A stretch of DNA of 64,000 nucleotides, taken from positions 1-64,000 of the IMG/VR virus record IMGVR_UViG_3300032334_001259; one strand, 5' to 3'. Positions 1,660 through 62,367 of this stretch are shown here, one piece after another (the first letter of the stretch is position 1; each line of letters opens with the position of its first letter). Below the pieces are notes generated by a model that saw only the letters and a program-made list of their open reading frames with translations, ran no database searches and was not told the DNA's origin. The position numbers and the translations under genes were made by a program.

Positions 1660-4600
1660 TAGGTTCTTATTGTAGTAGTTTGTCCATCGGGACCAGCACC
1701 ACCCCACGGAGCAATTACGTTACGGTCCATGCCAGTATTAGTAACCTGCAACAATTGGTCATAAACATTGCCTAACTTTTTAAGCAGATTGGCTAAAACT
1801 TTATTACCAAGTAATGTATTACGTAAACCTTCTATATTTTGTGGTGTAAGCTGTGCCAACATTTCTAACATGCCATAAGTCATTTGTTCTGTTGCAAATG
1901 GATTGTTATATTTTGTTGTTCCAATATCACCATAAAGAATCTTGTTTACAATGCTTAAAATTGTAGTAACAAACATATCATTATCAGTAAGAATTAAACC
2001 ACGATTTGTAACTTGAGCAAATTGTTTTTGACTACGATCTAAACCAACAATAAACATTTTGTCACCAAGCACAAGTATATTATTATCAACTGCTTGTTGT
2101 AGTGTAGTTAAGCCAATATCTTCCAATACTTTTGAATTAGTAGTTTCCCATTGTAAATCATAGAACATTTCATCAGCTTGTGCTGGCAACATTTTACTTG
2201 GATCAAATCCTTTGTTTACCAACATTTGATTACGCATGTCTGCATAGATTTCTTGACCAGTTTGTGGAATATATGTATCGGTTAAGAAATCAGGAATATC
2301 TGGTAAATTACCGCTATAAGCATCAAGATAGAAGCCAGCAGGATCACGAAGATACTTGCTATGTGGTAATTTAAATCTTTCAACATTAACACCAAGTGTT
2401 TCAAGTGCAGCGGCATTACGACCTTGACGCATTGAGGCTTTAATAGCATCACCATAAATGTTATCTTGTGCTACACGTTCAAGATAGTCACCCATTTGTC
2501 CATAACCATTTTGCTGACCATAGTAAGGTAACCCATCTGCAAATACATAAGCACTTATTGGATTATTTTGAACTGGTGCAAATATATCAACACCCATTGC
2601 TGTGCAATGATGATTTTCTTTAAGTATTTGTGCACAACTTGCAGCATGTGCGGCTTCACTTGCTTGAATGGCTGATTGAATTGTAGGATTACTACTTGCT
2701 TTTATTACGCTTAATTGTGCTTCTATACTAGTAATTTGTGCATCTACGGCGGCATCAAGAGTAGTATAAATTGTTCCATTGATATTAATAGTATCACTTG
2801 AAGCAGGTGCGCCGCCGCCACCGCCATCGCCATTAACGTGATATTGTCCTGATAAAAGTTTGTTGAGAACAGTGATACGAGAATTTAATTCTACACCATC
2901 AGCGGTTCCCATTAAAATATTATTAGCATCTGTAATAACTGGTAAAGTGTCATTATGAATATAACCAGCAGGTGTTCCTATAAAATCTGCCATAGTAATT
3001 TCACCAATACTACCACCGCCATAACCAAATGTTTGGTAAAGTTTTGAAACGGCTTGTGGATATATTGGTGTGCTCATTTGACTCATATGATTAAGGTCAA
3101 GACCAGCATCAGTTTTGCTTAATGCTGTTCCAATATCATCAAATGTTTTTGCTTTAGTTACACCAAGACTTGTAAAATGCTGACCTAAATCACTAAATGA
3201 TTTACTTGGTCCAGTTGAATATAAATCAGGACACATATAACTCATATCTGTTAATTGTCCAAGATGATCAATTTTTTTACCCAAATTAAATTGGCTACTC
3301 ACAGCACCAACCGCTGTTGGATCATTTATACTGTTTAAAATAGATTGCACTTTTGCATCATATTGTGGATTATCGATACCAGCAATAGGAATATTATTTT
3401 TAACTAACTTCTGTGTAAGACCTGTTGTATTTCCTAAACCTGCATTCAGAATTTGTTTTGCAACACGTGCAGGTTGTTGTAATCGCAACATATTTGTTGT
3501 ATCAAAAGTTCCAAGATTTTGTAAATTACTTGCGGCGGCTGGTAGATTACTTGTGAGTGAACTCATACCATAACTTATAACACCATTATTATTAACAAAG
3601 TTTGCACCCATAGCACCTGGTCCGTAAGCACCAAAACGTAGAGCACTTGCTTCTGCAGCTGCACCTACAATATTATTGCTTATTCCACCAAATGCATTTG
3701 CTAAACCCATAGTTTGAACAAAACTGGCACTTGCACCTGCACTGGCACCAGCAACCATATTCATTCCAACACGTTGAATCATACCATTAAGACCACCGTT
3801 GGCTGCAAATTGTTGAACTGCATTTGGTAAACTTAACGGATTACGTAATACACCATTAAGTGGACCTAAAAATCCACCAATTGCACCACCTAACGCACCA
3901 CCTACTCCACCACTTACTATTTGTGTAATTTCTTTTGGTAATACACCAGTTAAACTTGGTAATATTCCACCGCCAATATTTGATAATCTATCAAACATAC
4001 CACCAGATAGTTGATTTAATGGACCAGTAGCTTGTCCAAGAGCTTGTCCTAATCCACCTCCTAAAAGTCCACCTGCTTGACTTAATGCACCGCCCATAAG
4101 TCCTGTTATTCCTGTAGCTCCTAAAGCACCAGTAGCAACAGATAATGCAGTGTTAATTGCCGCACCTAAACCATTTAAAAAACCAGCACCAGCAATTGCA
4201 CCAAAAATACCCATACCTGCACCAGCACATCCTGCTCCAGTGCCAGGTGCGGCACCTTTTGCATTTTTTGCTAATTCTGCGCTTGGTCCACCTTTTGTTA
4301 CTTTACCATCATAGGTTCCATTTGCAAGTGCGGCTTCATCTGCACGACGACCAGGATTTGCACTTAATGAACCTATTTCATTAGACATTGCAGTGCTATC
4401 ACCAGTTCTTGCTGCACCCACTGCATCACTTAAACATGTACTTCCTGGTCCATAATTGTAAGCTAAACTTGTATAAGCGGCTTGTTGTTCCGCTGTCATA
4501 TTGCTCCAATAAGGTTCGCCAATTCTATTGGCAATGCCAGCTGCATATGTGTCAGTTATAGATGTTTGTAATAAACTTTGAGCACCAGCTTGATCTATGG

Positions 4601-11806: not shown

Positions 11807-12265
11807 CTATATTTTTAATTGTTTTGCGTTTACAGTATTAATCAGTTCTGCGGTTGGACTGATTGATAGGTTATTTACAACCACTCCATCCTGGTAATTC
11901 AGCGTATATAATCCACCCTCGCACCTGACTAAATTAAGGTATTCATGTTTTTTGCGGTCACGATAAACCTCTATTACCATACTATCCTTTTGTGAATAAG
12001 AAGTAAAGTATAAAGTGTAAAAAATACCCAAAGCACGTGCAGTATCGTCATATAAACCACTGCTTATAAGTGTCCACGGGTCAGGCCAATGACGACAATC
12101 ATCAAATTCAAGATAAGGGTCAGTTAATTTGCAATTCTGCCATGCTGTGGCAACAAGACGCAAGTGATCTTTGTCTATATTGCGCCTAAAATCACGCCAT
12201 TGTAGTATGTTTTCATGGGTTCTTGGCGTAATCCATTTAGAACATATCGAAGTATCTAATAGCAT
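11807..12265 (-). CDS. hypothetical phage protein
   Basis: 152-aa ORF in operon, WPDPW motif; start uncertain. Confidence 0.6.
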   Translation of the reverse strand: MLLDTSICSKWITPRTHENILQWRDFRRNIDKDHLRLVATAWQNCKLTDPYLEFDDCRHWPDPWTLISSGLYDDTARALGIFYTLYFTSYSQKDSMVIEVYRDRKKHEYLNLVRCEGGLYTLNYQDGVVVNNLSISPTAELINTVNAKQLKI

Positions 12266-15200
12266 AGTTGATAAGACCCGTACCTGTTGAATCGGTAGTG
12301 TATGTTACATCAGTGCCATTATAACCAAATGTAACACCAACATCACTACTGAATGTCCTATCATCTTCTATACTATATAAACCACCAGAAGTCAATGTAA
12401 ATTTAGCAAGTCCAGTGCAAACATTACTGCCTCTTGTAATTGTATATTGGAACTCAAATCCAAAGTTTTCACCAAATTCATTTAATCCAGTTACAAGAGC
12501 CGCAGTTGTATTATTTGCTAATGCTAAAGTTCTACCACGTTGGTAATTGATTGTTCCCATACGCAGACCGTAAGAATATACCCATTCAACAGCTTGTTCA
12601 ACTTCACTTACATATGGTATACCAGTGCTTGTGCTTGCCTGTGCTTCTGTTCTATCAAAACTATCACCAATACTTGCACAACCACTAATAGTAGTGTCAA
12701 AATATATGATTACATAAAATGGGTTTGCAACACCAGTGCTTTTGTTACCTACATCACGGTAATAATTACTTAAACTTAAGAAATTAGTGCTGTTTGTCAT
12801 ATAACAACCACTATTATAAATTAAGTCCATTGTGCTGTTGCTTATAGTAAAACCAATAGCACTTGTTCCAACAAAATACAAACCATGATAAAGATTACTG
12901 AATGTGCAACTATCTATTAAACCATTACTTGTATATTGACTACTTGGCAAATAAACACCTGTATGGAATCCATTGAATAAACAATCTATAATATTAACAT
13001 CACTTGCATATGCAAGAGCACGACCCAATAATTTTACACCAGCAGTTGTGCTACCATTTACTGGATCAGTTAATACAGTAACTGTGCTTGTGTTTGGTCC
13101 TTGGAAGCGAATATTGTCTAATGTAACACGTGTTGCACTGTCAATAACAATACCATCATTAAGACTTTGCAGTGTCATATCACTAATTGTAATATCTGTA
13201 GGTAATGCTGCACCATTCAAACCAATTAGATTTTGAATTTGTTGTAGGTCATCAGCGGTATACATTACCCAAGTAGTATATGGATATATGTAAGGATTTG
13301 CTGTTTGTGTAATTTGTGTATTATAAGTTCCTTCACCACGTAATCTTGCACGACTTGGAACATTAATACTACCGCTTACTATATAATTACCTGCTGGAAA
13401 CCATAAAACTTTATGTGCAGCAAGACTTGAAGTTCTGCAATATAGTTCATACATTGCACGGTTAATGGCTTCTGTGTCATCAGTAACACCATCACCTTTT
13501 GCACCAAAATCTTTAACACTTACGAAATCATCAAGTTTTTTCTGTAAAGAACGTTGTGTAATTGTTCCACCATAACTTAAACTTTGTGTAGTCCAAGTTT
13601 GTGCGTCAAGACTTGTACTGATATGACCGTCATCACCAATAGCATAATAGGTGCTACCAATATAACCCATACCACGATTGCTATAAGTTACTGATTGTGT
13701 TTCTTTTCTAAAATAATTGTATTGGCTTGTGCTGTAATAAAAGAAACCATATTGTCCACCGATAACATTAGTTGTGTTATTATCAGCAATATCATATAAA
13801 TCTGGTGCTAATGCACTACTACCAAAATAGATACTTGAATAGGTCCAAGTTACTGCATCTTGTGATTTGAGATATGTTAGACTTGTGTCACCACTTACAT
13901 AAAAATATGTTCCAATATAAGTAGAACCTGTAAAATTAGCAGTTGTAGTGGTTGTTTTTGTAAACCAACTGGTTCCATTTGTACTCGTAGCTATAACACC
14001 ATGATCACCAGTAACAATCCAATAATTTGTTGATGTCCCACCTGGTGGTGTAAATGTATAATATCTTACGCTATTCAAATCGCTCAATGAAACAGTAGCA
14101 CCAGTTGGATCAGTTGCACTATTTGCAATAGCACTACTCCAAGTTGTGCCGTCTGCACTGCTTACACCAACACCACTTGCACCAACTGCAATAGCCTTGA
14201 ATGTGCCACCACCTAAATCGGCAACAGCTACGCTACGCAATTCAACGCTTGTGCCACTACTACGTGCAGTCCAAGTTACGGCATTTGGACTTGTTAGTAT
14301 TGTTCCGTTAGCACCTACAGCTATCCATGTTGTAGTGCTTAATTTTGTAATACCAAGTAGATTTTGTGTAGTTCCACTTGTTTGTGCGGTAAATGTAGTT
14401 CCAGTTGTACTTGTTAAAATTACACCACTATCACCTACTACAACCCAAGTGGTTCCATCAAACCAAACTGCATTAAGACTTGTAGATACACCACTTGTTC
14501 TTGCTGTCCACGTAGCACCTGTTCCACTGGTATAGATTCCACCACTACCAGTTAAAACTGTGAATAAGCCAGCACCATTGTGATAGATATATTTGAAATT
14601 TTCAATAGCACTTGCAACAGTTGTGACACTACTTAAAGTTGTTCCAGTTGTGTTTTTATAAACATCGCCCCAACTTGTAAGTGACCAAACATTTGTTCCA
14701 TCATTTGTAACACTTACCAACCCATCAACAAGACTACGAGTCCAAGTTGAACCATCAGTGCTTACATAAACTTTATTATTTTCACATGTTGCAACAAAAG
14801 AATTGCCAGCAGTATTAGTAATATAACGCAAACCTAAAACATCATAAAAACCAACAGTTGTGACAGTCCAAGTGATAGCATCTGGACTTGTTATGATTGT
14901 TCCATTTGCGCCACCAGCAACAAATATACTGTTACCGTATGCTATGCTATAAAGTGCATCAGTTGTGCCTGTTGTTTGACTACTCCAAGTAACACCATTA
15001 TTACTTGTATAAACTTCACCAAGAGCAGTAACGAGAACAAACTTACTACTTGCATAAACAATTGCGTTGATATTTGTATATGAAACTGCACCGCTTGCTT
15101 GCCATACTGTTCCATTTGAACTATAAAGCACTGTTCCATTAGCACCAACTGCTACGAAATATCCACCACCATATGCAACATCAAGAAGATTTTGTGTAGT

Positions 15201-15569
15201 TCCACTTATAGTGCTATTCCATGTAGAACCATCAGTGCTTGTTAAAATATTTCCATTACTACCAACTACAACATATACTGAACCATTAGACGCAATTGCT
15301 TCATAAACTGCACGTGCATTACCAGTTTGTGGATTATAACCAGCATCACTGTTTTTAAAATCATATAAATTTGCTAAATTAAGGATGTCACTGTATTCAG
15401 TGAGAATTTCTGTATTACCAGTTTGTGGCGCACCATCACTTACAAGACCGTTACCAATAAAAAGGCGGCGTTCATCGACAGCATAACCTATTTCTGCCTT
15501 TGCAAGTTGTGGTAAATTTTCAAAAATTCCGCTACGATGTTGTATTCTTGAGATTTGGACAATGCTCAT
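12237..15569 (-). CDS. tailspike/receptor-binding protein: Mtd-like N-terminus, BNR/Asp-box propeller repeats, pectate-lyase-like beta-helix
   Basis: IQHRSG...LPQLAKAEIGYAVDERRLFIG; many S(T/P)DG.TW repeats; SVKDFGAKGDGVTDDTEAINRA; FPAGNY. Confidence 0.8.
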   Translation of the reverse strand: MSIVQISRIQHRSGIFENLPQLAKAEIGYAVDERRLFIGNGLVSDGAPQTGNTEILTEYSDILNLANLYDFKNSDAGYNPQTGNARAVYEAIASNGSVYVVVGSNGNILTSTDGSTWNSTISGTTQNLLDVAYGGGYFVAVGANGTVLYSSNGTVWQASGAVSYTNINAIVYASSKFVLVTALGEVYTSNNGVTWSSQTTGTTDALYSIAYGNSIFVAGGANGTIITSPDAITWTVTTVGFYDVLGLRYITNTAGNSFVATCENNKVYVSTDGSTWTRSLVDGLVSVTNDGTNVWSLTSWGDVYKNTTGTTLSSVTTVASAIENFKYIYHNGAGLFTVLTGSGGIYTSGTGATWTARTSGVSTSLNAVWFDGTTWVVVGDSGVILTSTTGTTFTAQTSGTTQNLLGITKLSTTTWIAVGANGTILTSPNAVTWTARSSGTSVELRSVAVADLGGGTFKAIAVGASGVGVSSADGTTWSSAIANSATDPTGATVSLSDLNSVRYYTFTPPGGTSTNYWIVTGDHGVIATSTNGTSWFTKTTTTTANFTGSTYIGTYFYVSGDTSLTYLKSQDAVTWTYSSIYFGSSALAPDLYDIADNNTTNVIGGQYGFFYYSTSQYNYFRKETQSVTYSNRGMGYIGSTYYAIGDDGHISTSLDAQTWTTQSLSYGGTITQRSLQKKLDDFVSVKDFGAKGDGVTDDTEAINRAMYELYCRTSSLAAHKVLWFPAGNYIVSGSINVPSRARLRGEGTYNTQITQTANPYIYPYTTWVMYTADDLQQIQNLIGLNGAALPTDITISDMTLQSLNDGIVIDSATRVTLDNIRFQGPNTSTVTVLTDPVNGSTTAGVKLLGRALAYASDVNIIDCLFNGFHTGVYLPSSQYTSNGLIDSCTFSNLYHGLYFVGTSAIGFTISNSTMDLIYNSGCYMTNSTNFLSLSNYYRDVGNKSTGVANPFYVIIYFDTTISGCASIGDSFDRTEAQASTSTGIPYVSEVEQAVEWVYSYGLRMGTINYQRGRTLALANNTTAALVTGLNEFGENFGFEFQYTITRGSNVCTGLAKFTLTSGGLYSIEDDRTFSSDVGVTFGYNGTDVTYTTDSTGTGLINYAIRYFDMF

Positions 15570-15595
15570 TAGTATCTCTCATTTTATAGAGATAT

Positions 15596-16297
15596 TTATG
15601 AGTTCTCCGCATAGAACTGCCAAACTCTATCCCACCAAGTTGCAGTCCACTGATCAAAATCGTCACCAGTAATGATCCAACGTTGTGGTTCACAGTTCTT
15701 ACTACACATTAAGATAACAATTTGTTTGATATCTGTGCCAAATATTTCATTATGAGCAGCAGCATAAGCGGCACCTTGAATAAAATAATCATGAATCCAT
15801 TCAGTTTTTTTAGGTTTATTGGTTTGTTTATAGTCTATAATACTTGGTTTACCATTATAAACACCAACAAGGTCAGTAGTGCCAGCATAAAGCTGTGGAT
15901 AATATAGTGCAGTTTCCATACCCCAAAATTCTTGGAGTTGTCCTTTAAGATATTCATTAATAATAGTATTTGCCATTTTAGCACTTTCTTGATGAACAGC
16001 ATTACTACCTGTTTTTAATTCACCATGTTCCAACCAATTTTCAAGTTGTTTATGCATACTGGTTCCACGTCCAGCAGCTTCTGTGGTAATAGCTTGTGCT
16101 TTTTGGACACCAACACGCTTACGCCATTCATTTAATGCTTGAACTTTTTCTTTTGGCTTTGTTTTGTCAAGAATAGTGGTTACAGAAGGAACAACATCAC
16201 CACTTGGTGTCAGGTATCTACGACCTTGTTCTGTTTCTTTTCGTTTAATTTCAGTGTAATTATATTGTGGATTGTGCTTTACCAGGATATTTGCCAA
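15596..16297 (-). CDS. PD-(D/E)xK exonuclease (Cas4/RecB-like phage exonuclease)
   Basis: PSVTTIL, RGTSMH, YAGTTD, IDYK and QxxAY motifs. Confidence 0.85.
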   Translation of the reverse strand: MANILVKHNPQYNYTEIKRKETEQGRRYLTPSGDVVPSVTTILDKTKPKEKVQALNEWRKRVGVQKAQAITTEAAGRGTSMHKQLENWLEHGELKTGSNAVHQESAKMANTIINEYLKGQLQEFWGMETALYYPQLYAGTTDLVGVYNGKPSIIDYKQTNKPKKTEWIHDYFIQGAAYAAAHNEIFGTDIKQIVILMCSKNCEPQRWIITGDDFDQWTATWWDRVWQFYAENS

Positions 16298-16636: not shown

Positions 16637-17569
16637 TTAGGATACACTTTTGCTTTTTGTTTTGCCACCTGCTTGTCTTTTACGTCTGCCAGCACAATGT
16701 GCTTTCTGGCTAAAACCTTTTGGATGACTGCAATTAATACTTTTCTTATATTTTTTAGTCCATGTTTCAATTATTTTCTGCATGGATTTTTTAACTTTAT
16801 ACTTTTTACCATCAACAATGAAGTAATCTAAACCTTTTTCACGTGCAGTTCTCAAAGCACCACTAAAGGCATTACCTTCACTTAAACTTAAATCATTATC
16901 AACTGCTTGTAGATGTGCGTCATTTAGTTTGTCAAGATCACCTTCATTACGAAGCAACTTAAATGTAAGGTTTTCAACACCAAATTCGCCTTCACGTTCT
17001 AATCCACTTTGGCGAAGTTTTTTAATACGTTCTTTTAAACGTTTAATAGTAGCACGGTCACCGCTTTCTACCGCTTGGTCTATTTCAGCATGTAGATGTT
17101 CAAATTTGTCTTGAATGTTTGTTGTATCTGGATTAGCTACAATTGTTTTAGGAAACTTAATCCAGTTATTATTATAAATGCTGTAAATTCCATTAGATAT
17201 ATGCTTTTCATCACTGCGTTGAACATATACTTCTACGGCATGTCCATAAATGCTTATATCATGTTGGTCGTTAAATGCACCTTTTTTAGCCATAAACAAT
17301 TGATCAAGGTCTTCTTCACATGGACCATTTACGTCTGCAACAAGATGTAAATCTATATCACTGTCTGCATTATAATTATAACTTGCATTACTACCACTTA
17401 TTGTAATATCAGTTAATTGTAAATTGGGAATGTTTATAAAATCAACAAATGCTTTGGCAATCTTAAACAATGCAAGACGGACTTCTGGTTTAAGGCGATT
17501 GTTTTCCCATAAATCAAGATTCAACTTGTCATGAAATTTTGTAAGTTGTTCTAAGTCACCAATGCGCAT
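16637..17569 (-). CDS. Pol-beta superfamily nucleotidyltransferase with C-terminal micro-domains
   Basis: GS...DIDL signature (ISGSNASYNYNADSDIDLH), third acid in VEVYV; TAAATA 4 nt before ATG. Confidence 0.75.
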   Translation of the reverse strand: MRIGDLEQLTKFHDKLNLDLWENNRLKPEVRLALFKIAKAFVDFINIPNLQLTDITISGSNASYNYNADSDIDLHLVADVNGPCEEDLDQLFMAKKGAFNDQHDISIYGHAVEVYVQRSDEKHISNGIYSIYNNNWIKFPKTIVANPDTTNIQDKFEHLHAEIDQAVESGDRATIKRLKERIKKLRQSGLEREGEFGVENLTFKLLRNEGDLDKLNDAHLQAVDNDLSLSEGNAFSGALRTAREKGLDYFIVDGKKYKVKKSMQKIIETWTKKYKKSINCSHPKGFSQKAHCAGRRKRQAGGKTKSKSVS

Positions 17570-18006: not shown

Positions 18007-18927
18007 TTAAACTCTCTTACCACGACCCAATTCAGCAGTTCCGCCAGCGGCACTATCAGCAGTGTCCAAATCGCCACCATCACGTGGAGGCATTGGTGCT
18101 GCATCAATATCACTTGCTGGTTCAGCAGTAGGAGCAGGTGCTCCACCTAAATCACCAACTGGTGCGGCACCCATTGGTTGTGCGCCATAAACACCACGTG
18201 CTGCATTATCAAGTGTGTCACGTGCGGTGTTTGCACTATCAAGCAATCCTTGTAGAACTTGCTTGGTTGAATCATTAAATGAATTAGCTTGTTCCATGCC
18301 AATTTCATCCTTCATTGCACTTACAAGTGCTGGAAGTTGTTCGTTTTGCATAGTGCTGATCTTTTCAACAATATCTTGGACTGTATCAGCAAGGTCACGT
18401 GCAGCCATAGTAACACGAGCCTGTTCAATTTCACCTTCTGTTAATGCTGGTGGCAGAACAATACTTTCGTTCTTTGCCATCTTTGTAGCAGTGGCATACA
18501 TAACTTCCTTACCACGCTTACCATAACGCTTTTCAAAATCACCACCACGCTTTTTAAGTGACTTAACAAAGTGTTCTTTCTTCTTTGTTTCGCCTGGTGT
18601 CAACTCACGTTCGTTGAGTTGGGTTGTGCAATATTCATTAATTGCGATCATCTTTTCTGCGAGTGCTTTGCGACCTGCTGCCATTTCATTCTTCCATGTT
18701 TCAAGGACTTTAGTTACCATAACAGCTTCCATATATTTTGGATTACGTTCTGCATGATGCACTTGTGAACTTTTACGAATTGTGTTAATTGTGCTTTGAA
18801 CAGTTGAAAGCATTTGGTTAACACTGCCTTCTGTTAAACTGTCAAGATTAAGTTGCCACTTGTAAACTTTCTCTAATTGCTTATTAAGTTCTACGGCAGA
18901 AAAATTATTAAATTCTTTAACAAACAT
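18007..18927 (-). CDS. putative prohead core/scaffold-like protein
   Basis: MFVKEF start, helical coiled segments bounded by xxE sites, TAAATA upstream. Confidence 0.5.
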   Translation of the reverse strand: MFVKEFNNFSAVELNKQLEKVYKWQLNLDSLTEGSVNQMLSTVQSTINTIRKSSQVHHAERNPKYMEAVMVTKVLETWKNEMAAGRKALAEKMIAINEYCTTQLNERELTPGETKKKEHFVKSLKKRGGDFEKRYGKRGKEVMYATATKMAKNESIVLPPALTEGEIEQARVTMAARDLADTVQDIVEKISTMQNEQLPALVSAMKDEIGMEQANSFNDSTKQVLQGLLDSANTARDTLDNAARGVYGAQPMGAAPVGDLGGAPAPTAEPASDIDAAPMPPRDGGDLDTADSAAGGTAELGRGKRV

Positions 18928-20659: not shown

Positions 20660-21484
20660 TTAGTAATAATCTTTAAGAATACGAATAATAATTTCTGGTC
20701 TACTATTTAATTTTTTAGTAAATTCAAACCAAAAAGCTGTATCATCAACCGCTGTTAATCCTAATTCACGTGCAAGTAAGTTTGCTGCCCTTGCATCTAT
20801 AGGTGCTACCTTTGTTGGAAATTCTGGAATATAATCATCTGTTTTGTAAACTTGATTAAGAACAGTATAAATTTGATTTTTTGTATCATTTGAACTTATT
20901 TTATTAAGTAAATTTTTCCAGAAAGATTCATCTGTAACAGTAGTTTTTATTATAGTTTCAATATCTCTTGAAACTGCAGGATCAATTGGTGCAACACGTC
21001 TTCCAACTGAACCGCTTGATGGTCCTTGATATCTTGCCCATAATGTTGGGTTTGTGAATCTTGCATTACGATTAGCATACCAGCTTGTAGTAGCTTGGTT
21101 TGATAATGCTATAATTGGCAATGGATTTTTAAATATTACTTCCCCTGTAGTATCATTAAATTCTGCTTCACTCGCCCTTAATGTAAATTTTGAAATAAAA
21201 TTTGACTTATCTTTTGGAACAAAGTTACCAGCACCCTTTGATAAAAGATAATCTACTACTGAATTGGTTAGATCGTTTCGCAGTTTATCTTCATCTGTTG
21301 TTTTTCTATCATATTCAGCTACATTATTTTTTTGTAGAAATTTAAGTTCATCATTAAAATCTTTTATAGCAGTTTTAATTACTTTCTCAAAAAATTCTCT
21401 ACTTTTTTCAAATTCTGGGTCACCAGATTTTGGTGGTGGATCACTTGGATTTGTAAGTTCAAAGATAAATTCACTTGCTCTCAT
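20660..21484 (-). CDS. putative internal head protein with CTS-like N-terminus
   Basis: Starts MRASEFIFE; internal duplication VAPIDP/VAPIDA...DD/E..FW. Confidence 0.55.
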   Translation of the reverse strand: MRASEFIFELTNPSDPPPKSGDPEFEKSREFFEKVIKTAIKDFNDELKFLQKNNVAEYDRKTTDEDKLRNDLTNSVVDYLLSKGAGNFVPKDKSNFISKFTLRASEAEFNDTTGEVIFKNPLPIIALSNQATTSWYANRNARFTNPTLWARYQGPSSGSVGRRVAPIDPAVSRDIETIIKTTVTDESFWKNLLNKISSNDTKNQIYTVLNQVYKTDDYIPEFPTKVAPIDARAANLLARELGLTAVDDTAFWFEFTKKLNSRPEIIIRILKDYY

Positions 21485-53900: not shown

Positions 53901-54123
53901 TATGGACTGTAGCCTTTATTTTTTCTAATGTTAGTATAGCATCATAAAGATGTTCTATGATATTGCCCGCAAATCCGCCAGTGTTTACACCCTGTTGCAT
54001 AAGATTTTTTGCCTCTGCACGAAGTTCACCAAGGAGATTAATCACATCATCTATGCTTGCATTACTTGTCAATCTTGTTGTTTCTTGTAATCCAGCAAGT
54101 CTTTTAATATCTTCTACACTCAT
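53893..54123 (-). CDS. small putative internal head protein
   Basis: ATGA-coupled start MSVEDIKRLAGLQE. Confidence 0.6.
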   Translation of the reverse strand: MSVEDIKRLAGLQETTRLTSNASIDDVINLLGELRAEAKNLMQQGVNTGGFAGNIIEHLYDAILTLEKIKATVHNG

Positions 54124-57100
54124 TTTATAACAATTCCTGCTACTGCTTGCATCCAACGAAGATCAGCTTTTACGCTTTCTTCTGTCTTTTCTTTCTTGTC
54201 CTTTACTGCCTTCTTGAATGGTTCTTTTTTGTCACCATCTTTGTCAACATCAAGGAAATCTGGCTTTGCTTTTGCTTCGTCAACCTTTGCTTCGTCAGTA
54301 TATTCAACATCATTATGCTTCATATAATCACGTGCTGTGTCAAGATAGTCAAGTGCCTTTGTAATCTTTGCTTGAACCCATTCAGGAAGATTTTCATCAT
54401 CTTGTAGGATTGCTTCAAGTTCTTTTGCCGCATCTGCCGCACCAGCAAGGTCATTCTTTGCCATACGGCCTTCTTGATCATATTCTGCCTTATCATCATC
54501 ACTTGGCTCACCATCTTGTGGAATGTTGTCATCTTCTTCTTGTGCGTAGATATAGTTTTCCATCAAAGGCAAACCCGCCAATTTACGCATTTCCATTACT
54601 TCTTTACTCATTTTGGTTTCCTTTGTTTCTTTCATATCACGTTCTGGATAATAATGTCCACCAGCATCATATGCACCGTGTGGATTGGTTGAACCGTCAG
54701 CATCATACCAGTCTTCTTTATCATCATAGCGTTTGTCATCGGCGTCTGAATCTTCATGTTCTGGTTTGTCTGCTGAACCACCTTCTTTTACTTGATAAGT
54801 TTTGCCATCTACTTCAAACTCTTTCTTACCAGCAGCTTTAGCAGCAGCTAATGCACCACTGAACTCATTGCCTTCATTTGGTTCTTCATTTACGTGTTCA
54901 CTGCTTTCCATAGCTTTTTTAATCCAAGCACGTGCTTCATCTTCTGTTTTAGCATGAAAGACATCACGACTTGGATTACGCTTTAGAACAATTTCGTAAC
55001 CACCTTTAGCATCTGGTTTAATCATATATGGAACTGGCTTTGAATCAGTCATACTTGCGGCACCAGCACCAAGACCAGCGGCAAGTGCACCAGCTGCTAT
55101 TGTTTTACCAATGCCTTCATCAGTTTCTTCTTCTTTCATGTACTTGTCTTTAATCTTGCCAAGTTCTTCTTGACTTGCACCTTCACGACCTGCTTTTGCA
55201 AGCGCAGCCATACCATCTTTGCCATATTTCTTTTTACCAGTGTAATATTGAAGTCCACTTTCTTCAACTTCATCTTCTTCAATACTTTCTGGATTGTATG
55301 CTGGTCCCTTAATGTTAGGCATTAATTCTTTATCAGAACTATGTTGTGCGCCTTTGACAAAACGATCCACTTGATTTGCGATTGCATCTTTTTTATGATC
55401 TAAATCCCAGTACATTCTATATAAATTAGCCATTCGTTGAGCATCATGCGGATTCTTTTCTTTAAGCCGTGCATAAATTTGATTAGCATCAGCATCTTCT
55501 TTGCCAGTCCACCAATAATCCAAACTTCCATCTTTTTGTTGATCATATTGATAACCAAAATTTTTCTGAACTATATCTAATATTTTTTTATGTATTGCAT
55601 CACGACTTGTTTGTATATTGGCAATTTTTTCACGAGCAACTTTTGCTGATTTATACAAAAGTTGTGGTGAAAGTTCATCAATTTGTTCTTCACTGACAGC
55701 ATCTTCACGCATACCAAGTGTTTGCATAACTTGGTTTACCATAGCACTTACATCACTGGTGCCAATTTCTTGTGCACCAACATGATCTTGCGCTACACTA
55801 TGAATAGCATCTAATACTTTATCAAGACCATGCGCACGAAGCATCTTGTTTGCGGCACCACTGCTCATAAGACGATGACTGATTGCATCAGTGATATCTT
55901 CTACACTGGCTTCTTCACCAATACTCATGATTTCTTCTGCAAATGCTTCACTTTCAGTCTTCTTACCCTTAATCTTTTCTGGCTTACGTGTTGTATCTTG
56001 ACGATATTCACGTTCCAACTTTGGATTTTGCTTAATAAGATTAAGTTCTTTAAGATACTTTTGTGCAAGAAGAATAGCTAATTTCTTGTCACTTGTATAT
56101 TCTTTGTCATCAGCTTTCTGTCCAAATGCTTCACCTTCACTGCTCATAAGGTCACCCATAAGTGCTGCAAAGTTTGCAACATCATCGCTATCAGGTGCTA
56201 CAAGACGGTTAGCAATATCACCAAGAATAGCAACCGCCATTGCCTTGCTATCTGTATAGTTACGGCTTGTCATCAACTTGTCAAGACCAGCATCTGCTTT
56301 CAAAAGTAATTTAAATTTTGGATTAAGAATCTTGTTCTTAACACTATCACTGACTTCATCAAGTTTGTTAAGTGTATTTTCACGAAGTTTTTTATAAGCA
56401 CCAGCAGCACTTGCAAGATAATTGTCAAGGTTTTCATTGTAAGTTTGTTGTGTGAACCATGCCTTTACTTCTGTAACATCATCAACTTGTTCACCCAAAA
56501 ACTCTGCAAGTGATTGTAAACTCTCATCAAATCTACGGCTATTATTGCTCAAACGATTAAGATGACGCTTAAGATTTTCTTTTACAGTTTGTGCGGCACG
56601 AATAACATTGCTTGCTTCTGCTGCTTCAAATGTGCGGCTACGTGTAGCACTTGCAAAGCGTCCCAGATTACGCATTTCATTTACTGCACGACTAATAATT
56701 TGTCCATTAGAATCATAAGGATTGCCACCACGTGATACGTGATTTGCCATTGCCTTTGCACCACTTACACTTTTAAATGGAAGTAGAAATTTCTCACCAC
56801 TTTCATTTACAAGGAAGATACGATCAACTTTTAACAAACGATTGTTTGGATTTTCCAACATGCGTTCATTATGAACAACATGAATACGAACATTGTTAAG
56901 GCTACCTTCACTCACCTTGCCTTTGCGTTGCCATAATACACGGCTTTCTTCTAATGATTCTTTCATTTTCTTTTTCTCTGGGTTGGTTTTAGCTAAAAAT
57001 TCATAATCTCTGCGACTTAATACATCTTTGCTTATGTCACGAACGTCAAAATTTAACATATGTGACTTTGCATAACGACGAAGTTCACGTAAGAAACGAT

Positions 57101-57362
57101 ACCAATAATCTTTGTCTTCTGGTAACATACGTTCAGTGATAGCATTATCAAAGAACACTTTCATGCTGTTACCATCAATAAGACTGCATGTAACTTCACC
57201 ATAATCACGTTCGCTTTGCTTATCAACATAACGGAAATTAAAAAAGCGTGAGGCTTCTGGATCAATGGTTGTTACACCATTTTCATCACCAAGTCTGATT
57301 TTTGGGAATCTATTTCTTAATTTAAAAAATAGATCGTTACTTGCATTACTTAAATCGGCCAT
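54120..57362 (-). CDS. large modular head-associated protein (conserved-looking N-half plus a string of Glu-delimited micro-domains)
   Basis: Directly downstream of terminase, TAAATA 5 nt before ATG, charged modules separated by xxE sites. Confidence 0.6.
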   Translation of the reverse strand: MADLSNASNDLFFKLRNRFPKIRLGDENGVTTIDPEASRFFNFRYVDKQSERDYGEVTCSLIDGNSMKVFFDNAITERMLPEDKDYWYRFLRELRRYAKSHMLNFDVRDISKDVLSRRDYEFLAKTNPEKKKMKESLEESRVLWQRKGKVSEGSLNNVRIHVVHNERMLENPNNRLLKVDRIFLVNESGEKFLLPFKSVSGAKAMANHVSRGGNPYDSNGQIISRAVNEMRNLGRFASATRSRTFEAAEASNVIRAAQTVKENLKRHLNRLSNNSRRFDESLQSLAEFLGEQVDDVTEVKAWFTQQTYNENLDNYLASAAGAYKKLRENTLNKLDEVSDSVKNKILNPKFKLLLKADAGLDKLMTSRNYTDSKAMAVAILGDIANRLVAPDSDDVANFAALMGDLMSSEGEAFGQKADDKEYTSDKKLAILLAQKYLKELNLIKQNPKLEREYRQDTTRKPEKIKGKKTESEAFAEEIMSIGEEASVEDITDAISHRLMSSGAANKMLRAHGLDKVLDAIHSVAQDHVGAQEIGTSDVSAMVNQVMQTLGMREDAVSEEQIDELSPQLLYKSAKVAREKIANIQTSRDAIHKKILDIVQKNFGYQYDQQKDGSLDYWWTGKEDADANQIYARLKEKNPHDAQRMANLYRMYWDLDHKKDAIANQVDRFVKGAQHSSDKELMPNIKGPAYNPESIEEDEVEESGLQYYTGKKKYGKDGMAALAKAGREGASQEELGKIKDKYMKEEETDEGIGKTIAAGALAAGLGAGAASMTDSKPVPYMIKPDAKGGYEIVLKRNPSRDVFHAKTEDEARAWIKKAMESSEHVNEEPNEGNEFSGALAAAKAAGKKEFEVDGKTYQVKEGGSADKPEHEDSDADDKRYDDKEDWYDADGSTNPHGAYDAGGHYYPERDMKETKETKMSKEVMEMRKLAGLPLMENYIYAQEEDDNIPQDGEPSDDDKAEYDQEGRMAKNDLAGAADAAKELEAILQDDENLPEWVQAKITKALDYLDTARDYMKHNDVEYTDEAKVDEAKAKPDFLDVDKDGDKKEPFKKAVKDKKEKTEESVKADLRWMQAVAGIVIK

Positions 57363-57378
57363 GTAATTATTTATCGCA

Positions 57379-58941
57379 CTATAACATAATAAAAGGCATT
57401 GGTGGAATGATATCTGCTGAATCCATGCTCAATCCATCACTGATTCTGGCATCATACATACGTAGATGTAATATCATTCTAACCGCTAATAATGTAGCCA
57501 TAACAAGGTCATCTGTTTCACCAATCTTTGCTTGATAGCTTACACCATGCGCAACGAATGTTTTTAATTCACTGACCAAAATCTTACTACAAATTTTAAT
57601 TTTATTTGTTTCTACCCACAACTTAAACTTACTACATGCGGCAATTTTGCTCTTTGGTGTAGTATTAAATCCTTTACGGTATCTACGTCCACCGCCACCA
57701 GCAGGTTCACTTAAGAAACTACCTGGTATATTTTCTTCACCAAAGTCAGCAACTGCATTAAGTGCAGCTTCGCCAATAGTATTATTTTCTATACTATAAT
57801 AGATGTTGCCAGGATCATTTGTAATTTCTTTAATATATTTGCAGATTTCTGCCATAATAGCAACTTGCTTTTGTATAATAGTTAAGTTATGTTGCCATTC
57901 AGCTACTTGACGCATGCTTGTTGCATCAAAAACTTGAATAGCGGCAGGATCACCACCTGTACCAAGACTTGGATCAAGTGCTATAATATAAACATGGTCA
58001 CGTTGTGGCTTTTCATACCAACGAACTTGACCTTGTTTTTCTATCGGTTCTACACCTTTTAAATCTGTCAAAATACTAGGAGCAATAAGAGTTTCGTCAT
58101 AAATGACAAATTCGCAATTATGTTCACGGCGGAAGCGATCTACACCAACACTTGCCATTTCACGTTCTGCCCAATCTTTACCACGTTCTGGATGACGATC
58201 CCAAGTAGCAAGATATGGACTAAATCCGTTACGACCAATAGGTGTTTCATTGCCAAAGCTATCAAATTTCTTATTTGCTTCTTTCCAAATATCAGCAAAT
58301 TGATCTTCATCACTGTTCGGTGTTGATGTAATAATTGCTTTACCACCAGTTGATAGGGTAGGACTAATAGATGTCCAAAATTCATGAGCAATAGTAGGAC
58401 GAACGAACGCCAACTCGTCACAGTATAGAAGTGAGATAGACATACCACGACCAGTAGTTTCTGTGGTGGTAGCACTTACAATGCGGCTACCATTGTCAAA
58501 TCCAAGACTACCTTTGTTATAATCAATAACGCCAGCACGTATATGGTCTGGGCAGTTTTCATAAGCATAACGAATACGCTGCATAATTTCTTGTGCGCCA
58601 ACATATTTGTTACTTGCAACCAGAATCGTGCTATCTGGAATAAACATTGCATACCAAAGTAAATAACCTGCCGCAATGGTAGTTTTACCCATCTGGCGAC
58701 CTAACATATTGATACTAAAGCGATTTTCGTGATAGTTTTTAAGTAATTCTTCCTGATAATCAAAAGGAACAAACTTTAATCTACCATGTGTAGGATGCTG
58801 AATGTAAAAGAAATTCTTAATAAAATATTCAGGTCCAGTTACGGGATCTGCACACAAACTAAACTCTATAAGTTCTTTCTGTGTTAGTTGCATACGTATA
58901 TGCGGTTTACGTATAAGGTTATTTTCTGGTTGTTTTGCCAT
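57379..58941 (-). CDS. terminase large subunit (gp17-like)
   Basis: YQ Q-motif, RQMGKTT Walker A, LLYCDE Walker B, TSTPN, ALDPSLG, DDLVMA. Confidence 0.95.
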   Translation of the reverse strand: MAKQPENNLIRKPHIRMQLTQKELIEFSLCADPVTGPEYFIKNFFYIQHPTHGRLKFVPFDYQEELLKNYHENRFSINMLGRQMGKTTIAAGYLLWYAMFIPDSTILVASNKYVGAQEIMQRIRYAYENCPDHIRAGVIDYNKGSLGFDNGSRIVSATTTETTGRGMSISLLYCDELAFVRPTIAHEFWTSISPTLSTGGKAIITSTPNSDEDQFADIWKEANKKFDSFGNETPIGRNGFSPYLATWDRHPERGKDWAEREMASVGVDRFRREHNCEFVIYDETLIAPSILTDLKGVEPIEKQGQVRWYEKPQRDHVYIIALDPSLGTGGDPAAIQVFDATSMRQVAEWQHNLTIIQKQVAIMAEICKYIKEITNDPGNIYYSIENNTIGEAALNAVADFGEENIPGSFLSEPAGGGGRRYRKGFNTTPKSKIAACSKFKLWVETNKIKICSKILVSELKTFVAHGVSYQAKIGETDDLVMATLLAVRMILHLRMYDARISDGLSMDSADIIPPMPFIML

Positions 58942-59015: not shown

Positions 59016-59522
59016 ATGGATACTCTAATATTAAATGCAAATTATCAACCACTATCTTGGCTTCCGTTAAGTGTAATTCCATGGCAACAAAGTGTGAAAT
59101 TACACTTTATGGAAAGAATTAAGATTTTGGAATATTATGATGACTGGGAAGTTCATAGTCCAAGTGTGACTATGAAGGTACCTGCTTTGGCTATTACAAA
59201 AGATTATCATAGTTTTAACAAAGGTATCCGTTTTAGCCGTCAAAATCTTTATATTCGTGATCTATTCCAATGTCAATATTGTGCTGAAACATTTGATTAT
59301 CATGAATTAAACATTGACCATGTAGTTCCATTAAGCAAAGGTGGTAAAACTAATTGGGAAAACTGTGTGACGAGTTGTATTCCATGCAATAGTCGGAAGG
59401 CTAATCGTATGCGTAAACCAATTCGTGAACCATTTAAACCTGATTATTGGACGTTGAGTGCTAGACGTAAACAATACACGTATGATTTAAAACACCCAAG
59501 TTGGCGTGATTATATTAATTAA
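59016..59522 (+). CDS. HNH endonuclease
   Basis: RD.FQCQYC, IDHVVP.SKGG..NWEN....C..CN..K. Confidence 0.9.
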   Translation: MDTLILNANYQPLSWLPLSVIPWQQSVKLHFMERIKILEYYDDWEVHSPSVTMKVPALAITKDYHSFNKGIRFSRQNLYIRDLFQCQYCAETFDYHELNIDHVVPLSKGGKTNWENCVTSCIPCNSRKANRMRKPIREPFKPDYWTLSARRKQYTYDLKHPSWRDYIN

Positions 59523-60019
59523 GCAAAAGCAGTTTTTAATTTTTGTAAGAAACTTTGCTTTCTTGGTTGTGTAACTTGCTTTGGTTCTGGTTTAGGTTCA
59601 GGTGTTGGTTCTTGTTTTACAACATCAGGTTTTCCAAGTCCTGCACCTGCTGCCCAAAATGCTTTTGCATCTTTGCTTTGTGCTGGACTTGGTGCTACAT
59701 CATTACCTAATTCACGAACAAAATTATACATAGCACTGGCAATACCCCGTCTTTGGTGACTAGTTCTTACATTTACAAATGAAACTTCTAAATTTTCACC
59801 TTTTGGAATAAATCTTCCAAAACCTACAGCATCTATACTATTTGCTAATTCAGGATCGTCTTTATCAGTAACATATACTATAATACCAGGAGACTTGGCA
59901 TCATCTTTTGTTTGTGCAAATAAAAAATATTTTCCACCCATAATTGGTTTATGCCATTTTTTATTTGGTTCTAAACTATTAGGGTTTAACTTTTCTGGTA
60001 AAAATTCACTTGCTCGCAT
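59519..60019 (-). CDS. GNAT-like acetyltransferase with CTS-like N-terminus
   Basis: MRASEFLPE start; V...HQRRGIASAMY acetyl-CoA motif A; AKAFW. Confidence 0.65.
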   Translation of the reverse strand: MRASEFLPEKLNPNSLEPNKKWHKPIMGGKYFLFAQTKDDAKSPGIIVYVTDKDDPELANSIDAVGFGRFIPKGENLEVSFVNVRTSHQRRGIASAMYNFVRELGNDVAPSPAQSKDAKAFWAAGAGLGKPDVVKQEPTPEPKPEPKQVTQPRKQSFLQKLKTAFA

Positions 60020-60398
60020 TTTTTCTTTTACCACTATTTGCGTTTACAGGACTTTTTTGATTTACATCTGGATGTTCATGTGTATTGTCATATCTGTGTG
60101 ATTTTACTGCAGCATGACCAGTTGCTTTACTTGCACCTTGCATTGCTAACATATCACCATCACTATAAGGTGCAATAATTAATTTATCACCAAGTGCAGT
60201 TTGGTCATCATAAGCATCTGGTTGTGGTTCGGGACTACGAGCCATAAGAATACCATAACGATACATTCTGTAAAAATTTTGGCTGGCATCTGGAATTATG
60301 AAAGCACCAGGAACTTCACGTGCTTCATAATCTTTGTGGTCAGCTGCAAAGTCTTTTTCATAATCTTCTTGTTCAGTTATAAATTCTTTTGCTCTCAT
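60006..60398 (-). CDS. putative internal head protein, paralog family A
   Basis: MRAKEFITE; YRMYR; NQKSPV..NSG. Confidence 0.6.
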   Translation of the reverse strand: MRAKEFITEQEDYEKDFAADHKDYEAREVPGAFIIPDASQNFYRMYRYGILMARSPEPQPDAYDDQTALGDKLIIAPYSDGDMLAMQGASKATGHAAVKSHRYDNTHEHPDVNQKSPVNANSGKRKNASK

Positions 60399-61661: not shown

Positions 61662-62017
61662 TTTCTTTTAGATTTGCCACTATTAAAAGGCACTGGACTT
61701 GTTTTATTAATTTGAGGCATTTCGCTGCTATCTTTTGTCGTGAGTTCTTTACTTGTATATCCCATATTTTTACCAGCCTTAATAGCAATCTCTTCATCTG
61801 CTGGTGTATAACTTATTGTAACCATATTTGGTCCTGTTGGACCATCTTTAGGCATATCATTATCGGGACAACCTGCCATTGCTACTAACATTCTATACAT
61901 ATCGTATGGATTACCGTTACTTAATTGAGGCCAAACACGTGCACCTGGTATACCAAATATTGCATTTTTAGGTAATTTACTATGACCAAGAGATTCTATT
62001 ATTTCTTTAAATCTCAT
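61658..62017 (-). CDS. putative internal head protein, paralog family A
   Basis: MRFKEIIE; YDMYR; NKTSPV..NSG. Confidence 0.6.
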   Translation of the reverse strand: MRFKEIIESLGHSKLPKNAIFGIPGARVWPQLSNGNPYDMYRMLVAMAGCPDNDMPKDGPTGPNMVTISYTPADEEIAIKAGKNMGYTSKELTTKDSSEMPQINKTSPVPFNSGKSKRK

Positions 62018-62367
62018 TTCTTTCTCCTTGCTCCACTATTATGTGGAACAGGACTTACTTTATTATTAGAGTCAGGTTCACGACCTTTTTCTTTTGTAAT
62101 CCACTTTGATTTATGTCCAAGACCTTTTATAGCATTATTAAGCATATCCATTTCTTCTGGACAATAAGCAGCAGCAAGTGGCTGATCACGGAAATGTTCA
62201 TGCTCGTGTGGTGCTTTGTGATGTGGATGTGCGGCAACTACTGTCATAAAACGATAATAATCATAACCTGAATCCATATCAGGATATACTAAACTTGGTG
62301 GCATTGTGCTTATATGCTCACCATTGGTTTTTGATTTTGCTTCTATAACAAATTCTGCGGCTCTCAT
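62014..62367 (-). CDS. putative internal head protein, paralog family A
   Basis: MRAAEFVIE; YDYYR; NKVSPV..NSG. Confidence 0.6.
   Translation of the reverse strand: MRAAEFVIEAKSKTNGEHISTMPPSLVYPDMDSGYDYYRFMTVVAAHPHHKAPHEHEHFRDQPLAAAYCPEEMDMLNNAIKGLGHKSKWITKEKGREPDSNNKVSPVPHNSGARRKK

What the first reader, a model, noticed from the sequence alone, without database searches (positions are those of the whole stretch)
16790..16879. Same 30-aa micro-domain in two unrelated proteins 38 kb apart
Seen: EGNAFSGALRTAREKGLDYFIVDGKKYKVK in the nucleotidyltransferase matches EGNEFSGALAAAKAAGKKEFEVDGKTYQVK in the 1080-aa protein (about 54783-54875). Both copies begin right at a Glu. This is direct in-window evidence that these modules are mobile. 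The NTase then carries a second Glu-preceded module (WTKKYKKSINCSHPKGFSQKAHCAGR, two Cys plus His).
Basis: seen in the sequence. Interest (0 to 1): 0.62.

Follow-up and report, generated by a model that had tools for sequence, protein, structure and literature searches.

The report
Shuffled mini-domain in jumbo-phage proteins
The 30-residue match is real: it is an undescribed, virus-only mini-domain (one helix plus a beta-hairpin) that has been shuffled among at least 21 kinds of highly charged phage proteins, probably ones carried inside the phage head.

Summary
Confirmed. Residues 231-260 of the NTase-like protein (window 16790-16879, minus strand) and 830-859 of the 1080-aa protein (54786-54875, minus strand) share 18/30 residues. 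No shuffle out of 3000 reached the score (Gumbel p about 2e-4). A third copy lies at genome position 232 kb.

The module matches no Pfam, PHROG, NCBIfam or PDB entry, no GenBank phage record, and no searched paper. A profile of 70 copies finds 1860 protein clusters. Carriers from 80 viral loci fall into at least 21 architectures, some with tandem copies. Only one hit occurred in 185,579 cellular genomes, on a phage-like contig. AlphaFold predicts a helix packed on a beta-hairpin.

The two window copies are old (60% DNA identity), so this is ancient shuffling, not a recent transfer. Sister phages show a route: their NTase gene carries in-frame cassettes directly before the module, each flanked by an exact 19-nt repeat.

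Function is inferred. The flanks read [VILM]-x-E|G, like T4 prohead-protease sites. The phage encodes that protease. The 1080-aa protein resembles a PA5oct virion protein. Several carriers start with T4-like capsid-targeting leaders. Head-internal, protease-processed proteins are the best guess.

The parts
16790..16879 (-). Mini-domain copy 1, residues 231-260 of the NTase-like protein P0001
54786..54875 (-). Mini-domain copy 2, residues 830-859 of the 1080-aa protein P0002
16637..17569 (-). Carrier 1: 310-aa protein. An NTase-like domain (1-229, phrog_36119) is followed by the mini-domain and a Cys/His basic tail.
   Evidence: Homology to phage NTase-like proteins ends at residue 229-231.
16685..16768 (-). 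Second module (E-x-W-x-K-K-Y-K ... C-x-H ... H-C), residues 268-295 of P0001. The basic tail runs on to 16640.
   Evidence: It stands alone in Bellamy gp122 and forms the C-terminus of S-SM2 gp108.
54120..57362 (-). Carrier 2: 1080-aa protein directly downstream of TerL. The N-terminal ~330 aa are homologous to PA5oct gp278, a virion structural protein detected by ESI-MS/MS. The C-terminal ~600 aa are acidic linkers and mini-domains.
54567..54602 (-). Motif EM-R-K-LAGL in P0002. It nearly matches the C-terminal tail of the putative scaffold protein (EM-K-R-LAGL-K-stop, genome 144838-145947).
55140..55259 (-). Another shuffled mini-module of P0002 (SGLQYYTGKKKYGKDG...), preceded by V-E-E. It is also found in the carriers at L038 and L060.
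54195..54266 (-). Another shuffled mini-module of P0002 (KPDFLDVDKDGDKKEP..., EF-hand-like loop), preceded by V-D-E. It is also found in the carriers at L011, L034 and L038.
57379..58941 (-). Large terminase, directly upstream of carrier 2. It is 54% identical to PA5oct TerL.
   Evidence: TerL is the commonest neighbour of module carriers.

Best explanation
The two stretches are homologous copies of an undescribed, virus-restricted mini-domain of about 30-34 residues. The consensus is [VILM]-x-E-G-N-A-F-S-G-A-L-x-x-A-K-x-x-G-x-D-E-F-E-V-D-G-K-x-Y-K-V-K-E. It is predicted to fold on its own as one amphipathic helix packed against a beta-hairpin. It is one bead in a vocabulary of mini-modules strung on acidic linkers in highly charged proteins of freshwater and marine phages, many of them jumbo phages. 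Evolution has joined it to many unrelated partners, here an NTase-like enzyme and a TerL-adjacent virion-protein homologue. This happened long ago for the window's copies. It has happened recently in sister phages, where in-frame cassettes sit directly before the module between exact 19-nt direct repeats that encode Q-G-V-A-E-G. These points are shown: homology, spread, predicted fold, shuffling and the repeat-flanked cassettes. The function is inferred. The carriers are probably capsid-internal proteins of the T4 type, and the [VILM]-x-E|G boundaries are probably prohead-protease sites that release or trim the beads. What the bead itself binds is unknown. My odds are about 0.9 for the shown part, about 0.45 for a head-internal location of P0002 and P0005, and about 0.3 for actual cleavage at the module boundaries.
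For: Significance of the match. Third copy in the genome.

Spread: at least 297 tblastn-confirmed stretches in IMG/VR. The profile finds 1860 clusters at E<=1e-3 and 629 at E<=1e-10. There are at least 21 architectures, with up to 4 tandem copies. Only 1 hit occurred in 185,579 cellular genomes, on a phage-like contig of a Prochlorococcus single-cell genome.

Fold: helix 3-20 and strands 24-27 and 30-33, mean pLDDT 79.

Boundary of the NTase homology.

Cassettes: L087 and L090 are 98.5-99.3% identical on both sides and differ by a 321-nt in-frame insert flanked by the exact 19-mer. L088 and L089 carry other inserts at the same site, and gene order matches the window.

Head-internal reading:
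- In 313 distinct instances, position -2 is aliphatic in 60%, E1 is present in 98% and G2 in 95%. At the C-terminal end, V29 is present in 97% and E31 in 52%.
- A Peptidase_S77 (T4 gp21 family) gene scores 90 bits in this genome, and the family is present in 4 of 5 other large viral records examined (three with the module, two chosen for the 19-nt joint).
- The major capsid protein carries L-A-E|S at the position expected for T4-type maturation.
- The PA5oct homologue of the P0002 N-terminal domain is a virion protein by mass spectrometry.
- TerL is the commonest neighbour of carriers, at least 12 of 115.
- P0005 and P0006 and about 10 other proteins of this genome start with leaders like the T4 capsid-targeting sequence MKTYQEFIAE. 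There are 16 matches against 3.9 +/- 1.9 in shuffles. The conservation is in the peptide, not the DNA.
- 53 of 148 carriers have such leaders, against 24 +/- 4 expected.
- T4 specificity (L/I-x-E) and the role of the capsid-targeting sequence are taken from PMC9026906.
Against: No experimental evidence shows that any carrier is in a virion or is cleaved. P0001 and P0002 lack a leader like the T4 capsid-targeting sequence. P0002's own copy is preceded by P-N-E, which is not the protease consensus. The PA5oct virion homologue has no module, so the module is not needed for that family's incorporation. The aliphatic residue at -2 and the Glu could simply belong to the fold, since AlphaFold extends the helix over them. 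Peptidase_S77 is common in myoviruses, so its presence discriminates little. No structural neighbour or ligand was found.
Confidence: 0.7

Rival explanations
1. The match is chance or compositional similarity between two charged, low-complexity stretches.
For: The pairwise BLASTP E-value is only 0.008, and both proteins are rich in K, E and A.
Against: None of 3000 shuffles reached the score. Thirteen positions are conserved across 70-313 instances, including F5, A12, F20 and G24. There are 1860 profile hits.
Confidence: 0.01
2. The match is a recent duplication or gene conversion between the two genes within this genome.
For: Both copies lie in the same genome, 38 kb apart on the same strand.
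Against: DNA identity is 54/90, no higher than the protein identity predicts. Each copy resembles the copies in its own carrier's orthologues. The signature P-N-E-G-N-E-F is shared by P0002-family members in other contigs, and Y-F-I-V-D-G-K-K-Y-K-V-K-K by the NTase lineage. The genome holds no shared repeat of 14 nt or more at these sites.
Confidence: 0.03
3. The module is an ordinary uncleaved accessory or adaptor domain that binds some partner or ligand, on cytoplasmic phage proteins with no link to the capsid. On this view the Glu and the aliphatic residue before it are simply part of the fold.
For: AlphaFold places positions -3 to +3 inside the helix. The NTase-like carrier has no targeting leader. 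Carriers also include proteins with LysM and other non-head domains.
Against: Carriers cluster beside TerL. Many have leaders like the T4 capsid-targeting sequence. P0002 shares the putative scaffold's C-terminal motif. Three different linker types in three lineages all end in aliphatic-x-E: V-A-E|G, V-N-E and [VILM]-x-E|G.
Confidence: 0.3
4. The module is itself a capsid-targeting or core-docking handle. It recruits cargo such as the NTase-like enzyme to the prohead core and is then clipped off, as happens to the C-terminal propeptide of T4 Alt.
For: In P0001 the module is separated from the enzyme by L-S-E|G and from the next module by I-I-E|T. T4 Alt loses both N- and C-terminal propeptides to gp21 (PMC9026906). 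The same module sits in a virion-protein homologue.
Against: The PA5oct virion homologue lacks the module. Many carriers already have N-terminal leaders, and tandem copies would be redundant for targeting. No partner has been identified.
Confidence: 0.12

Closest known systems
T4 internal proteins (IPI-III, Alt) with capsid-targeting sequence and gp21 processing
   Same: Diverse, fast-evolving small proteins and enzymes. They carry short N-terminal leaders (T4: MKTYQEFIAE; here M-R-A-S-E-F-I-x-E and similar). Cleavage motifs are aliphatic-x-Glu. A gp21-family protease is encoded.
   Different: Here the units are beads strung within long acidic polyprotein-like chains, with the motif at internal module boundaries. 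The two window carriers of the mini-domain lack the leader. Neither packaging nor cleavage has been shown.
Polyvalent proteins of phages and conjugative elements (Iyer, Burroughs, Anand, de Souza and Aravind 2017; cited from my own knowledge, not read here)
   Same: Variable fusions of unrelated enzymatic and binding domains in one polypeptide. In sister phages the NTase-like enzyme is fused to ParB-like and other inserts.
   Different: The chains are much smaller. No embedded processing peptidase was seen. The domains are joined by a fixed 19-nt in-frame repeat, which to my knowledge has not been described for polyvalent proteins.
Ig-like and other accessory domains scattered on phage structural proteins (Fraser et al. 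2006; own knowledge)
   Same: A small accessory domain, dispensable for the host protein's core function, shuffled among unrelated phage proteins.
   Different: The module is one third the size, has a different predicted fold (helix plus hairpin), also occurs on an enzyme, and is probably internal rather than surface-exposed.
Mobile PeSL regulatory cassettes in T4-type phages (Arbiol et al. 2010; own knowledge)
   Same: Short conserved DNA repeats flank exchangeable cassettes and promote modular shuffling by recombination.
   Different: PeSL elements are intergenic promoter and stem-loop units. The 19-mer here lies inside ORFs, always in one reading frame, and joins protein domains.
T4 fibritin foldon (own knowledge)
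   Same: An autonomous phage mini-domain of about 30 residues built around a beta-hairpin.
   Different: There is no sequence relation. Foldon is a C-terminal trimerisation unit, whereas no oligomerisation could be shown for this module.

Membership tests
Any curated protein family (Pfam-A, PHROGs, NCBIfam) or solved structure | Significant profile or sequence match over the 30-residue module | tested here: not met
   Pfam found nothing meaningful at E<=5. The PHROG hits cover only the partner domains. NCBIfam found nothing. A PDB profile search gave a best E of 0.33. Foldseek gave a best E of 1.8.
Pol-beta-type nucleotidyltransferase (carrier P0001) | NTP_transf_2-type profile match with the G-S...D-x-D catalytic motif | tested here: inconclusive
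   The motif G-S-N-A-S...D-S-D-I-D is visible. But NTP_transf_2 scores E=0.12 and MTPAP-like E=0.062, both below the Pfam cut-offs. The best PDB match, a putative NTase, scores E=0.93. Homologues in GenBank phages are annotated as hypothetical or as aminoglycoside NTase.
T4-type capsid-internal proteins | N-terminal capsid-targeting leader of about 10 residues ending aliphatic-x-Glu | tested here: inconclusive
   Met for P0005 (M-R-I-N-D-I-I-V-E) and P0006 (M-K-M-E-D-V-L-G-E). Not met for the two window carriers P0001 and P0002.
T4-type capsid-internal proteins | gp21-family (Peptidase_S77) prohead protease encoded by the phage | tested here: met
   PF03420 scores 90 bits at genome 146086-146511.
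T4-type capsid-internal proteins | Physical presence in the head and cleavage after Glu | not testable with these tools
   The only evidence is indirect: the PA5oct homologue of the P0002 N-terminal domain is a virion protein by ESI-MS/MS.
Polyvalent proteins | Several unrelated effector domains in one chain, plus a processing peptidase | tested here: not met
   The window's P0001 has one enzyme-like domain plus two mini-modules. Multi-domain versions exist only in sister phages. No peptidase domain was found in the carriers.
Repeat-flanked in-frame cassette system (19-nt joint encoding QGVAEG) | The exact 19-mer, or the peptide G-V-A-E-G, at module junctions | tested here: not met
   Absent from the window's whole genome at up to 4 mismatches, and absent at peptide level. 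Present in orthologous loci of sister phages.

The most novel reading that the evidence does not exclude
A clade of freshwater jumbo phages loads its heads with trains of mini-domains and small enzymes. N-terminal leaders like the T4 capsid-targeting sequence, together with scaffold-like motifs, bring the trains into the prohead. The gp21-type protease cuts them at aliphatic-x-Glu joints into free beads, including this helix-hairpin module. In sister lineages the joint is fixed as an exact, GC-rich 19-nt in-frame adaptor (Q-G-V-A-E-G) that serves both as a protease site and as a universal recombination site. Any cassette can then be swapped in frame between genes and phages. This would amount to exon shuffling without introns.
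Probability: 0.2. Interest if true: 0.85.

Novelty: new variant of a known kind. Interest (0 to 1): 0.62.

Why it matters
The module defines a large virus-only domain family of 1860 clusters that no database or searched paper describes. It opens a view on a whole vocabulary of mini-modules in jumbo-phage dark matter. If the carriers are head-internal and protease-processed, T4's route for loading varied internal proteins has grown into a modular cargo system in uncultured freshwater phages. The repeat-flanked in-frame cassettes seen in sister phages would then be a simple, testable mechanism for domain shuffling in viruses. They might also serve as natural design rules for packaging foreign proteins into phage heads.

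Tried and rejected
- Complex prediction, P0002 module against P0001 module: no verdict. It counts neither for nor against binding.
- Foldseek against the PDB found nothing usable, for the 38-residue model or for the P0002 N-terminal domain.
- The PDB sequence-profile search and the ESM Atlas feature search found nothing usable.
- tblastn of the module against 50,697 GenBank phage records gave no hit for this module. Only the second module was found there.
- Pfam scans of 156 carriers returned almost no known partner domains: DUF3008 four times and LysM once.
- I looked for a conserved DNA joint or repeated 14-mer in the window's own genome and found none.
- I tried to define module boundaries from BLAST HSP start points. 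They were too fuzzy to use.
- I asked whether the N-terminal leaders are a mobile promoter or RBS cassette. This was rejected: the upstream DNA and the codons are not conserved.
- An assembly or adapter artefact as the source of the 19-mer was rejected. The site is in frame in 145 of 147 cases, occurs in JGI and ENA assemblies, has rare synonymous variants, and is flanked by 99%-identical DNA with or without the insert.
- Two technical failures occurred.

Full report
**Setting.** The window is the first 64 kb of a complete 338,435-bp viral record with direct terminal repeats and 35.5% G+C. Its large terminase is 54% identical to that of Pseudomonas jumbo phage PA5oct and 50-52% identical to those of Sinorhizobium phage Phosso and Agrobacterium phage Atu_ph07. 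Lake and freshwater metagenomes from several studies hold partial matches to 20-30% of the sampled 31-letter words, so the phage has freshwater relatives.

**Observation.** The 310-aa protein P0001 (window 16637-17569, minus strand) carries the quoted 30 residues at 231-260, which is 16790-16879. The 1080-aa protein P0002 (54120-57362, minus strand) carries its copy at 830-859, which is 54786-54875.
- Identity is 18/30 in protein and 54/90 in DNA.
- BLASTP gives E=0.008.
- The Smith-Waterman score is 86 against 45 +/- 6 for shuffles. None of 3000 shuffles reached it, and the Gumbel p is about 2e-4.
- A profile of the two copies finds a third copy at genome 232357-232452, in a 245-aa protein (P0005), at E=1e-4.

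**What the module is.** It has no match in Pfam, PHROGs, NCBIfam, PDB sequences or the searched literature. tblastn against 50,697 GenBank phage records does not find it.

It is nevertheless common in uncultured viruses.
- A pattern scan of IMG/VR gave at least 297 confirmed stretches.
- A profile of 70 copies found 1860 proteins at E<=1e-3 and 629 at E<=1e-10 among 1.84 billion cluster representatives.
- Only one hit appeared in 185,579 bacterial and archaeal species genomes, on a phage-like contig of a Prochlorococcus single-cell genome.

With the module masked, the carriers from 80 loci fall into at least 21 unrelated architectures. Proteins carry one to four copies, often in tandem. Carriers are very charged, about 19% D+E and 15% K+R, and almost free of known domains.

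The alignment has near-invariant E1, G2, N3, F5, A8, A12, G16, F20, V22, G24, K25, Y27 and V29. AlphaFold with this alignment predicts a helix (3-20) packed on a beta-hairpin (24-27, 30-33) at mean pLDDT 79. Nothing similar was found in the PDB, which is expected for 38 residues.

**Shuffling.** NTase-like homologues of P0001 in cyanophages, Maribacter phages and Lak megaphages align only up to residue 229-231, exactly where the module begins. The N-terminal 330 residues of P0002 are homologous to PA5oct gp278, which has no module.

It is a 51-aa stand-alone protein in cyanophage Bellamy and the C-terminus of S-SM2 gp108.

The window's two copies are old. They show 60% DNA identity. By my count from the sequences, P0002's copy is about 79% identical to the copy in its orthologue at L012. 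That copy shares the orthologues' P-N-E-G-N-E-F signature, while the NTase copy groups with NTase-lineage copies. The window therefore shows ancient domain shuffling, not a recent intragenomic move.

**A mechanism seen in sister phages.** Metagenomic orthologues of the NTase locus have the same gene order as the window. L087 and L090 are 98.5-99.3% identical on both sides but differ by a 321-nt in-frame insert placed directly before the module. L088 and L089 carry other inserts at the same point.

Every insert is flanked by the exact 19-mer AGCAAGGTGTGGCGGAAGG, read as Q-G-V-A-E-G. Its final E-G doubles as the first two residues of the module. The 19-mer is perfectly conserved between phages whose flanks are only 71-78% identical.

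The sites are in the same reading frame in 145 cases and lie between unrelated protein segments. Conservation stops sharply at the edges of the 19-20 nt. Of 255 G-V-A-E-G sites in these loci, 223 use the same codons.

Sites are few per genome (2-4) and are clustered in a few genes. Contigs that include a terminase belong to the window's clade, with TerL 61-64% identical.

These multi-joint proteins contain the same modules as the window's P0002, P0005 and P0006. The window's own genome has no such joint in DNA or peptide, so this is evidence from relatives.

**Function (inferred).** Several independent hints point to capsid-internal proteins of the T4 kind.
1. In 313 distinct instances, position -2 is V, I, L or M in 60%, followed by x-E|G. 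At the C-terminal end, V29 is present in 97% and E31 in 52%. T4 gp21 cuts after L/I-x-E (PMC9026906). The Q-G-V-A-E|G joint and the E-S-V-N-E linkers of another lineage fit the same rule.
2. The phage encodes a Peptidase_S77 (gp21 family) protease. So do 4 of 5 other large viral records examined, three chosen for the module and two for the joint. Its major capsid protein has L-A-E|S where T4-type maturation is expected (the T4 site is from my own knowledge).
3. PA5oct gp278 is a virion protein by mass spectrometry. TerL is the commonest neighbour of carriers, at least 12 of 115.
4. T4 IPII and IPIII begin MKTYQEFIAE. Sixteen proteins of this genome begin with a similar leader, against 3.9 +/- 1.9 in shuffles. 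They include a tight M-R-A-S-E-F-I-x-E family, P0005 and P0006. The conservation is in the peptide, not in the DNA or the upstream region. Of 148 carriers elsewhere, 53 have such leaders, against 24 +/- 4 expected.
5. P0002 and the 87-aa ORF next to it contain E-M-R-K-L-A-G-L-type motifs. Otherwise this motif occurs in the genome only at the very C-terminus of the putative scaffold protein, which lies between the protease and the capsid genes.

Against this reading:
- P0001 and P0002 lack the leader.
- P0002's copy follows P-N-E, not the protease consensus.
- The -2 residue and the Glu may simply be part of the helix.
- Nothing here is experimental.

What the bead binds remains unknown. A module-module complex prediction gave no verdict.

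**Verdict.** The module is a new, large, virus-only mini-domain family. Its most likely context is protease-delimited beads of head-internal proteins, at roughly even odds for location and about 0.3 for cleavage. The repeat-flanked in-frame cassettes of sister phages are the most unusual result, and they lie outside the window.

Noticed in passing
L087:3192-3210; L090:3192-3210 and 3513-3531; L088 and L089 likewise; 147 sites in L091-L210: The exact 19-nt sequence AGCAAGGTGTGGCGGAAGG lies inside ORFs, always read as Q-G-V-A-E-G. It flanks in-frame cassettes and joins unrelated protein segments in viral contigs of the window's clade. It is GC-rich in AT-rich genomes and is sharply bounded. It is absent from the window's genome.
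   Followed up: partly
window 20660-21484, 59519-60019, 60006-60398, 62014-62367 (all minus strand); also genome 232144-232881, 243515-243916, 297068-297964, 298696-300048: A family of N-terminal leaders, M-R-A-S-E-F-I-x-E, resembles the T4 capsid-targeting sequence MKTYQEFIAE. There are 16 matches against about 4 expected. Conservation is at the peptide level only. Three of these genes lie just upstream of TerL.
   Followed up: partly
window 54567-54602 and 54082-54117 (minus strand); genome 144838-145947: The motif E-M-[KR]-[KR]-L-A-G-L occurs three times in the genome: in P0002, in the adjacent 87-aa ORF, and as the C-terminal tail of the putative scaffold protein. Similar L-A-G-[LIV] motifs recur in module carriers elsewhere (L034, L060, L011, L012).
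   Followed up: partly
genome 297068-297964 (plus strand); L127, L193, L196: A twin-arginine-signal-like stretch (R-R-G-F-L-K-G-L) follows directly after a T4-like targeting leader, or after the Q-G-V-A-E-G joint, in several proteins. This hints at proteins that are exported by the host Tat pathway after delivery.
   Followed up: no
window 55140-55259, 54195-54266, 55716-55904 (minus strand): P0002 holds further shuffled mini-modules: S-G-L-Q-Y-Y-T-G-K-K-K-Y-G-K-D-G..., an EF-hand-like K-P-D-F-L-D-V-D-K-D-G-D-K-K-E-P, and a 63-residue helical unit. They recur in other combinations in L011, L034, L038, L060, L093 and L097. In the related 316-kb phage (L034) they are spread over separate genes.
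   Followed up: partly
genome 231197-232881 (L005:341-2025, minus strand): P0005 and P0006 each carry one half of Pfam DUF5872 at sub-threshold scores, plus Cys-rich mini-modules (C-W-K-G-Y...C-V-K; C-P-H-C-G-G). These reappear as Q-G-V-A-E-G-bounded cassettes in L113 and L120.
   Followed up: partly
proteins P0055, P0065, P0047 (metagenomic carriers): In another phage lineage, long proteins are built from many small domains separated by a repeated linker, E-S-V-N-E or E-S-I-N-E. This linker also ends in aliphatic-x-Glu.
   Followed up: no
protein P0019: A 261-aa metagenomic protein joins a TctC-like periplasmic-receptor N-terminus to the ParB-like cassette and the two modules. It is probably an assembly chimera rather than a real fusion.
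   Followed up: no
window 12237-16297 (minus strand): The NTase-like gene sits in a block with a 1110-aa pectate-lyase-type fibre or spike protein and a PD-(D/E)XK exonuclease (phrog_298). The 306-aa protein upstream (18007-18927) hits a 'virion structural protein' PHROG.
   Followed up: no
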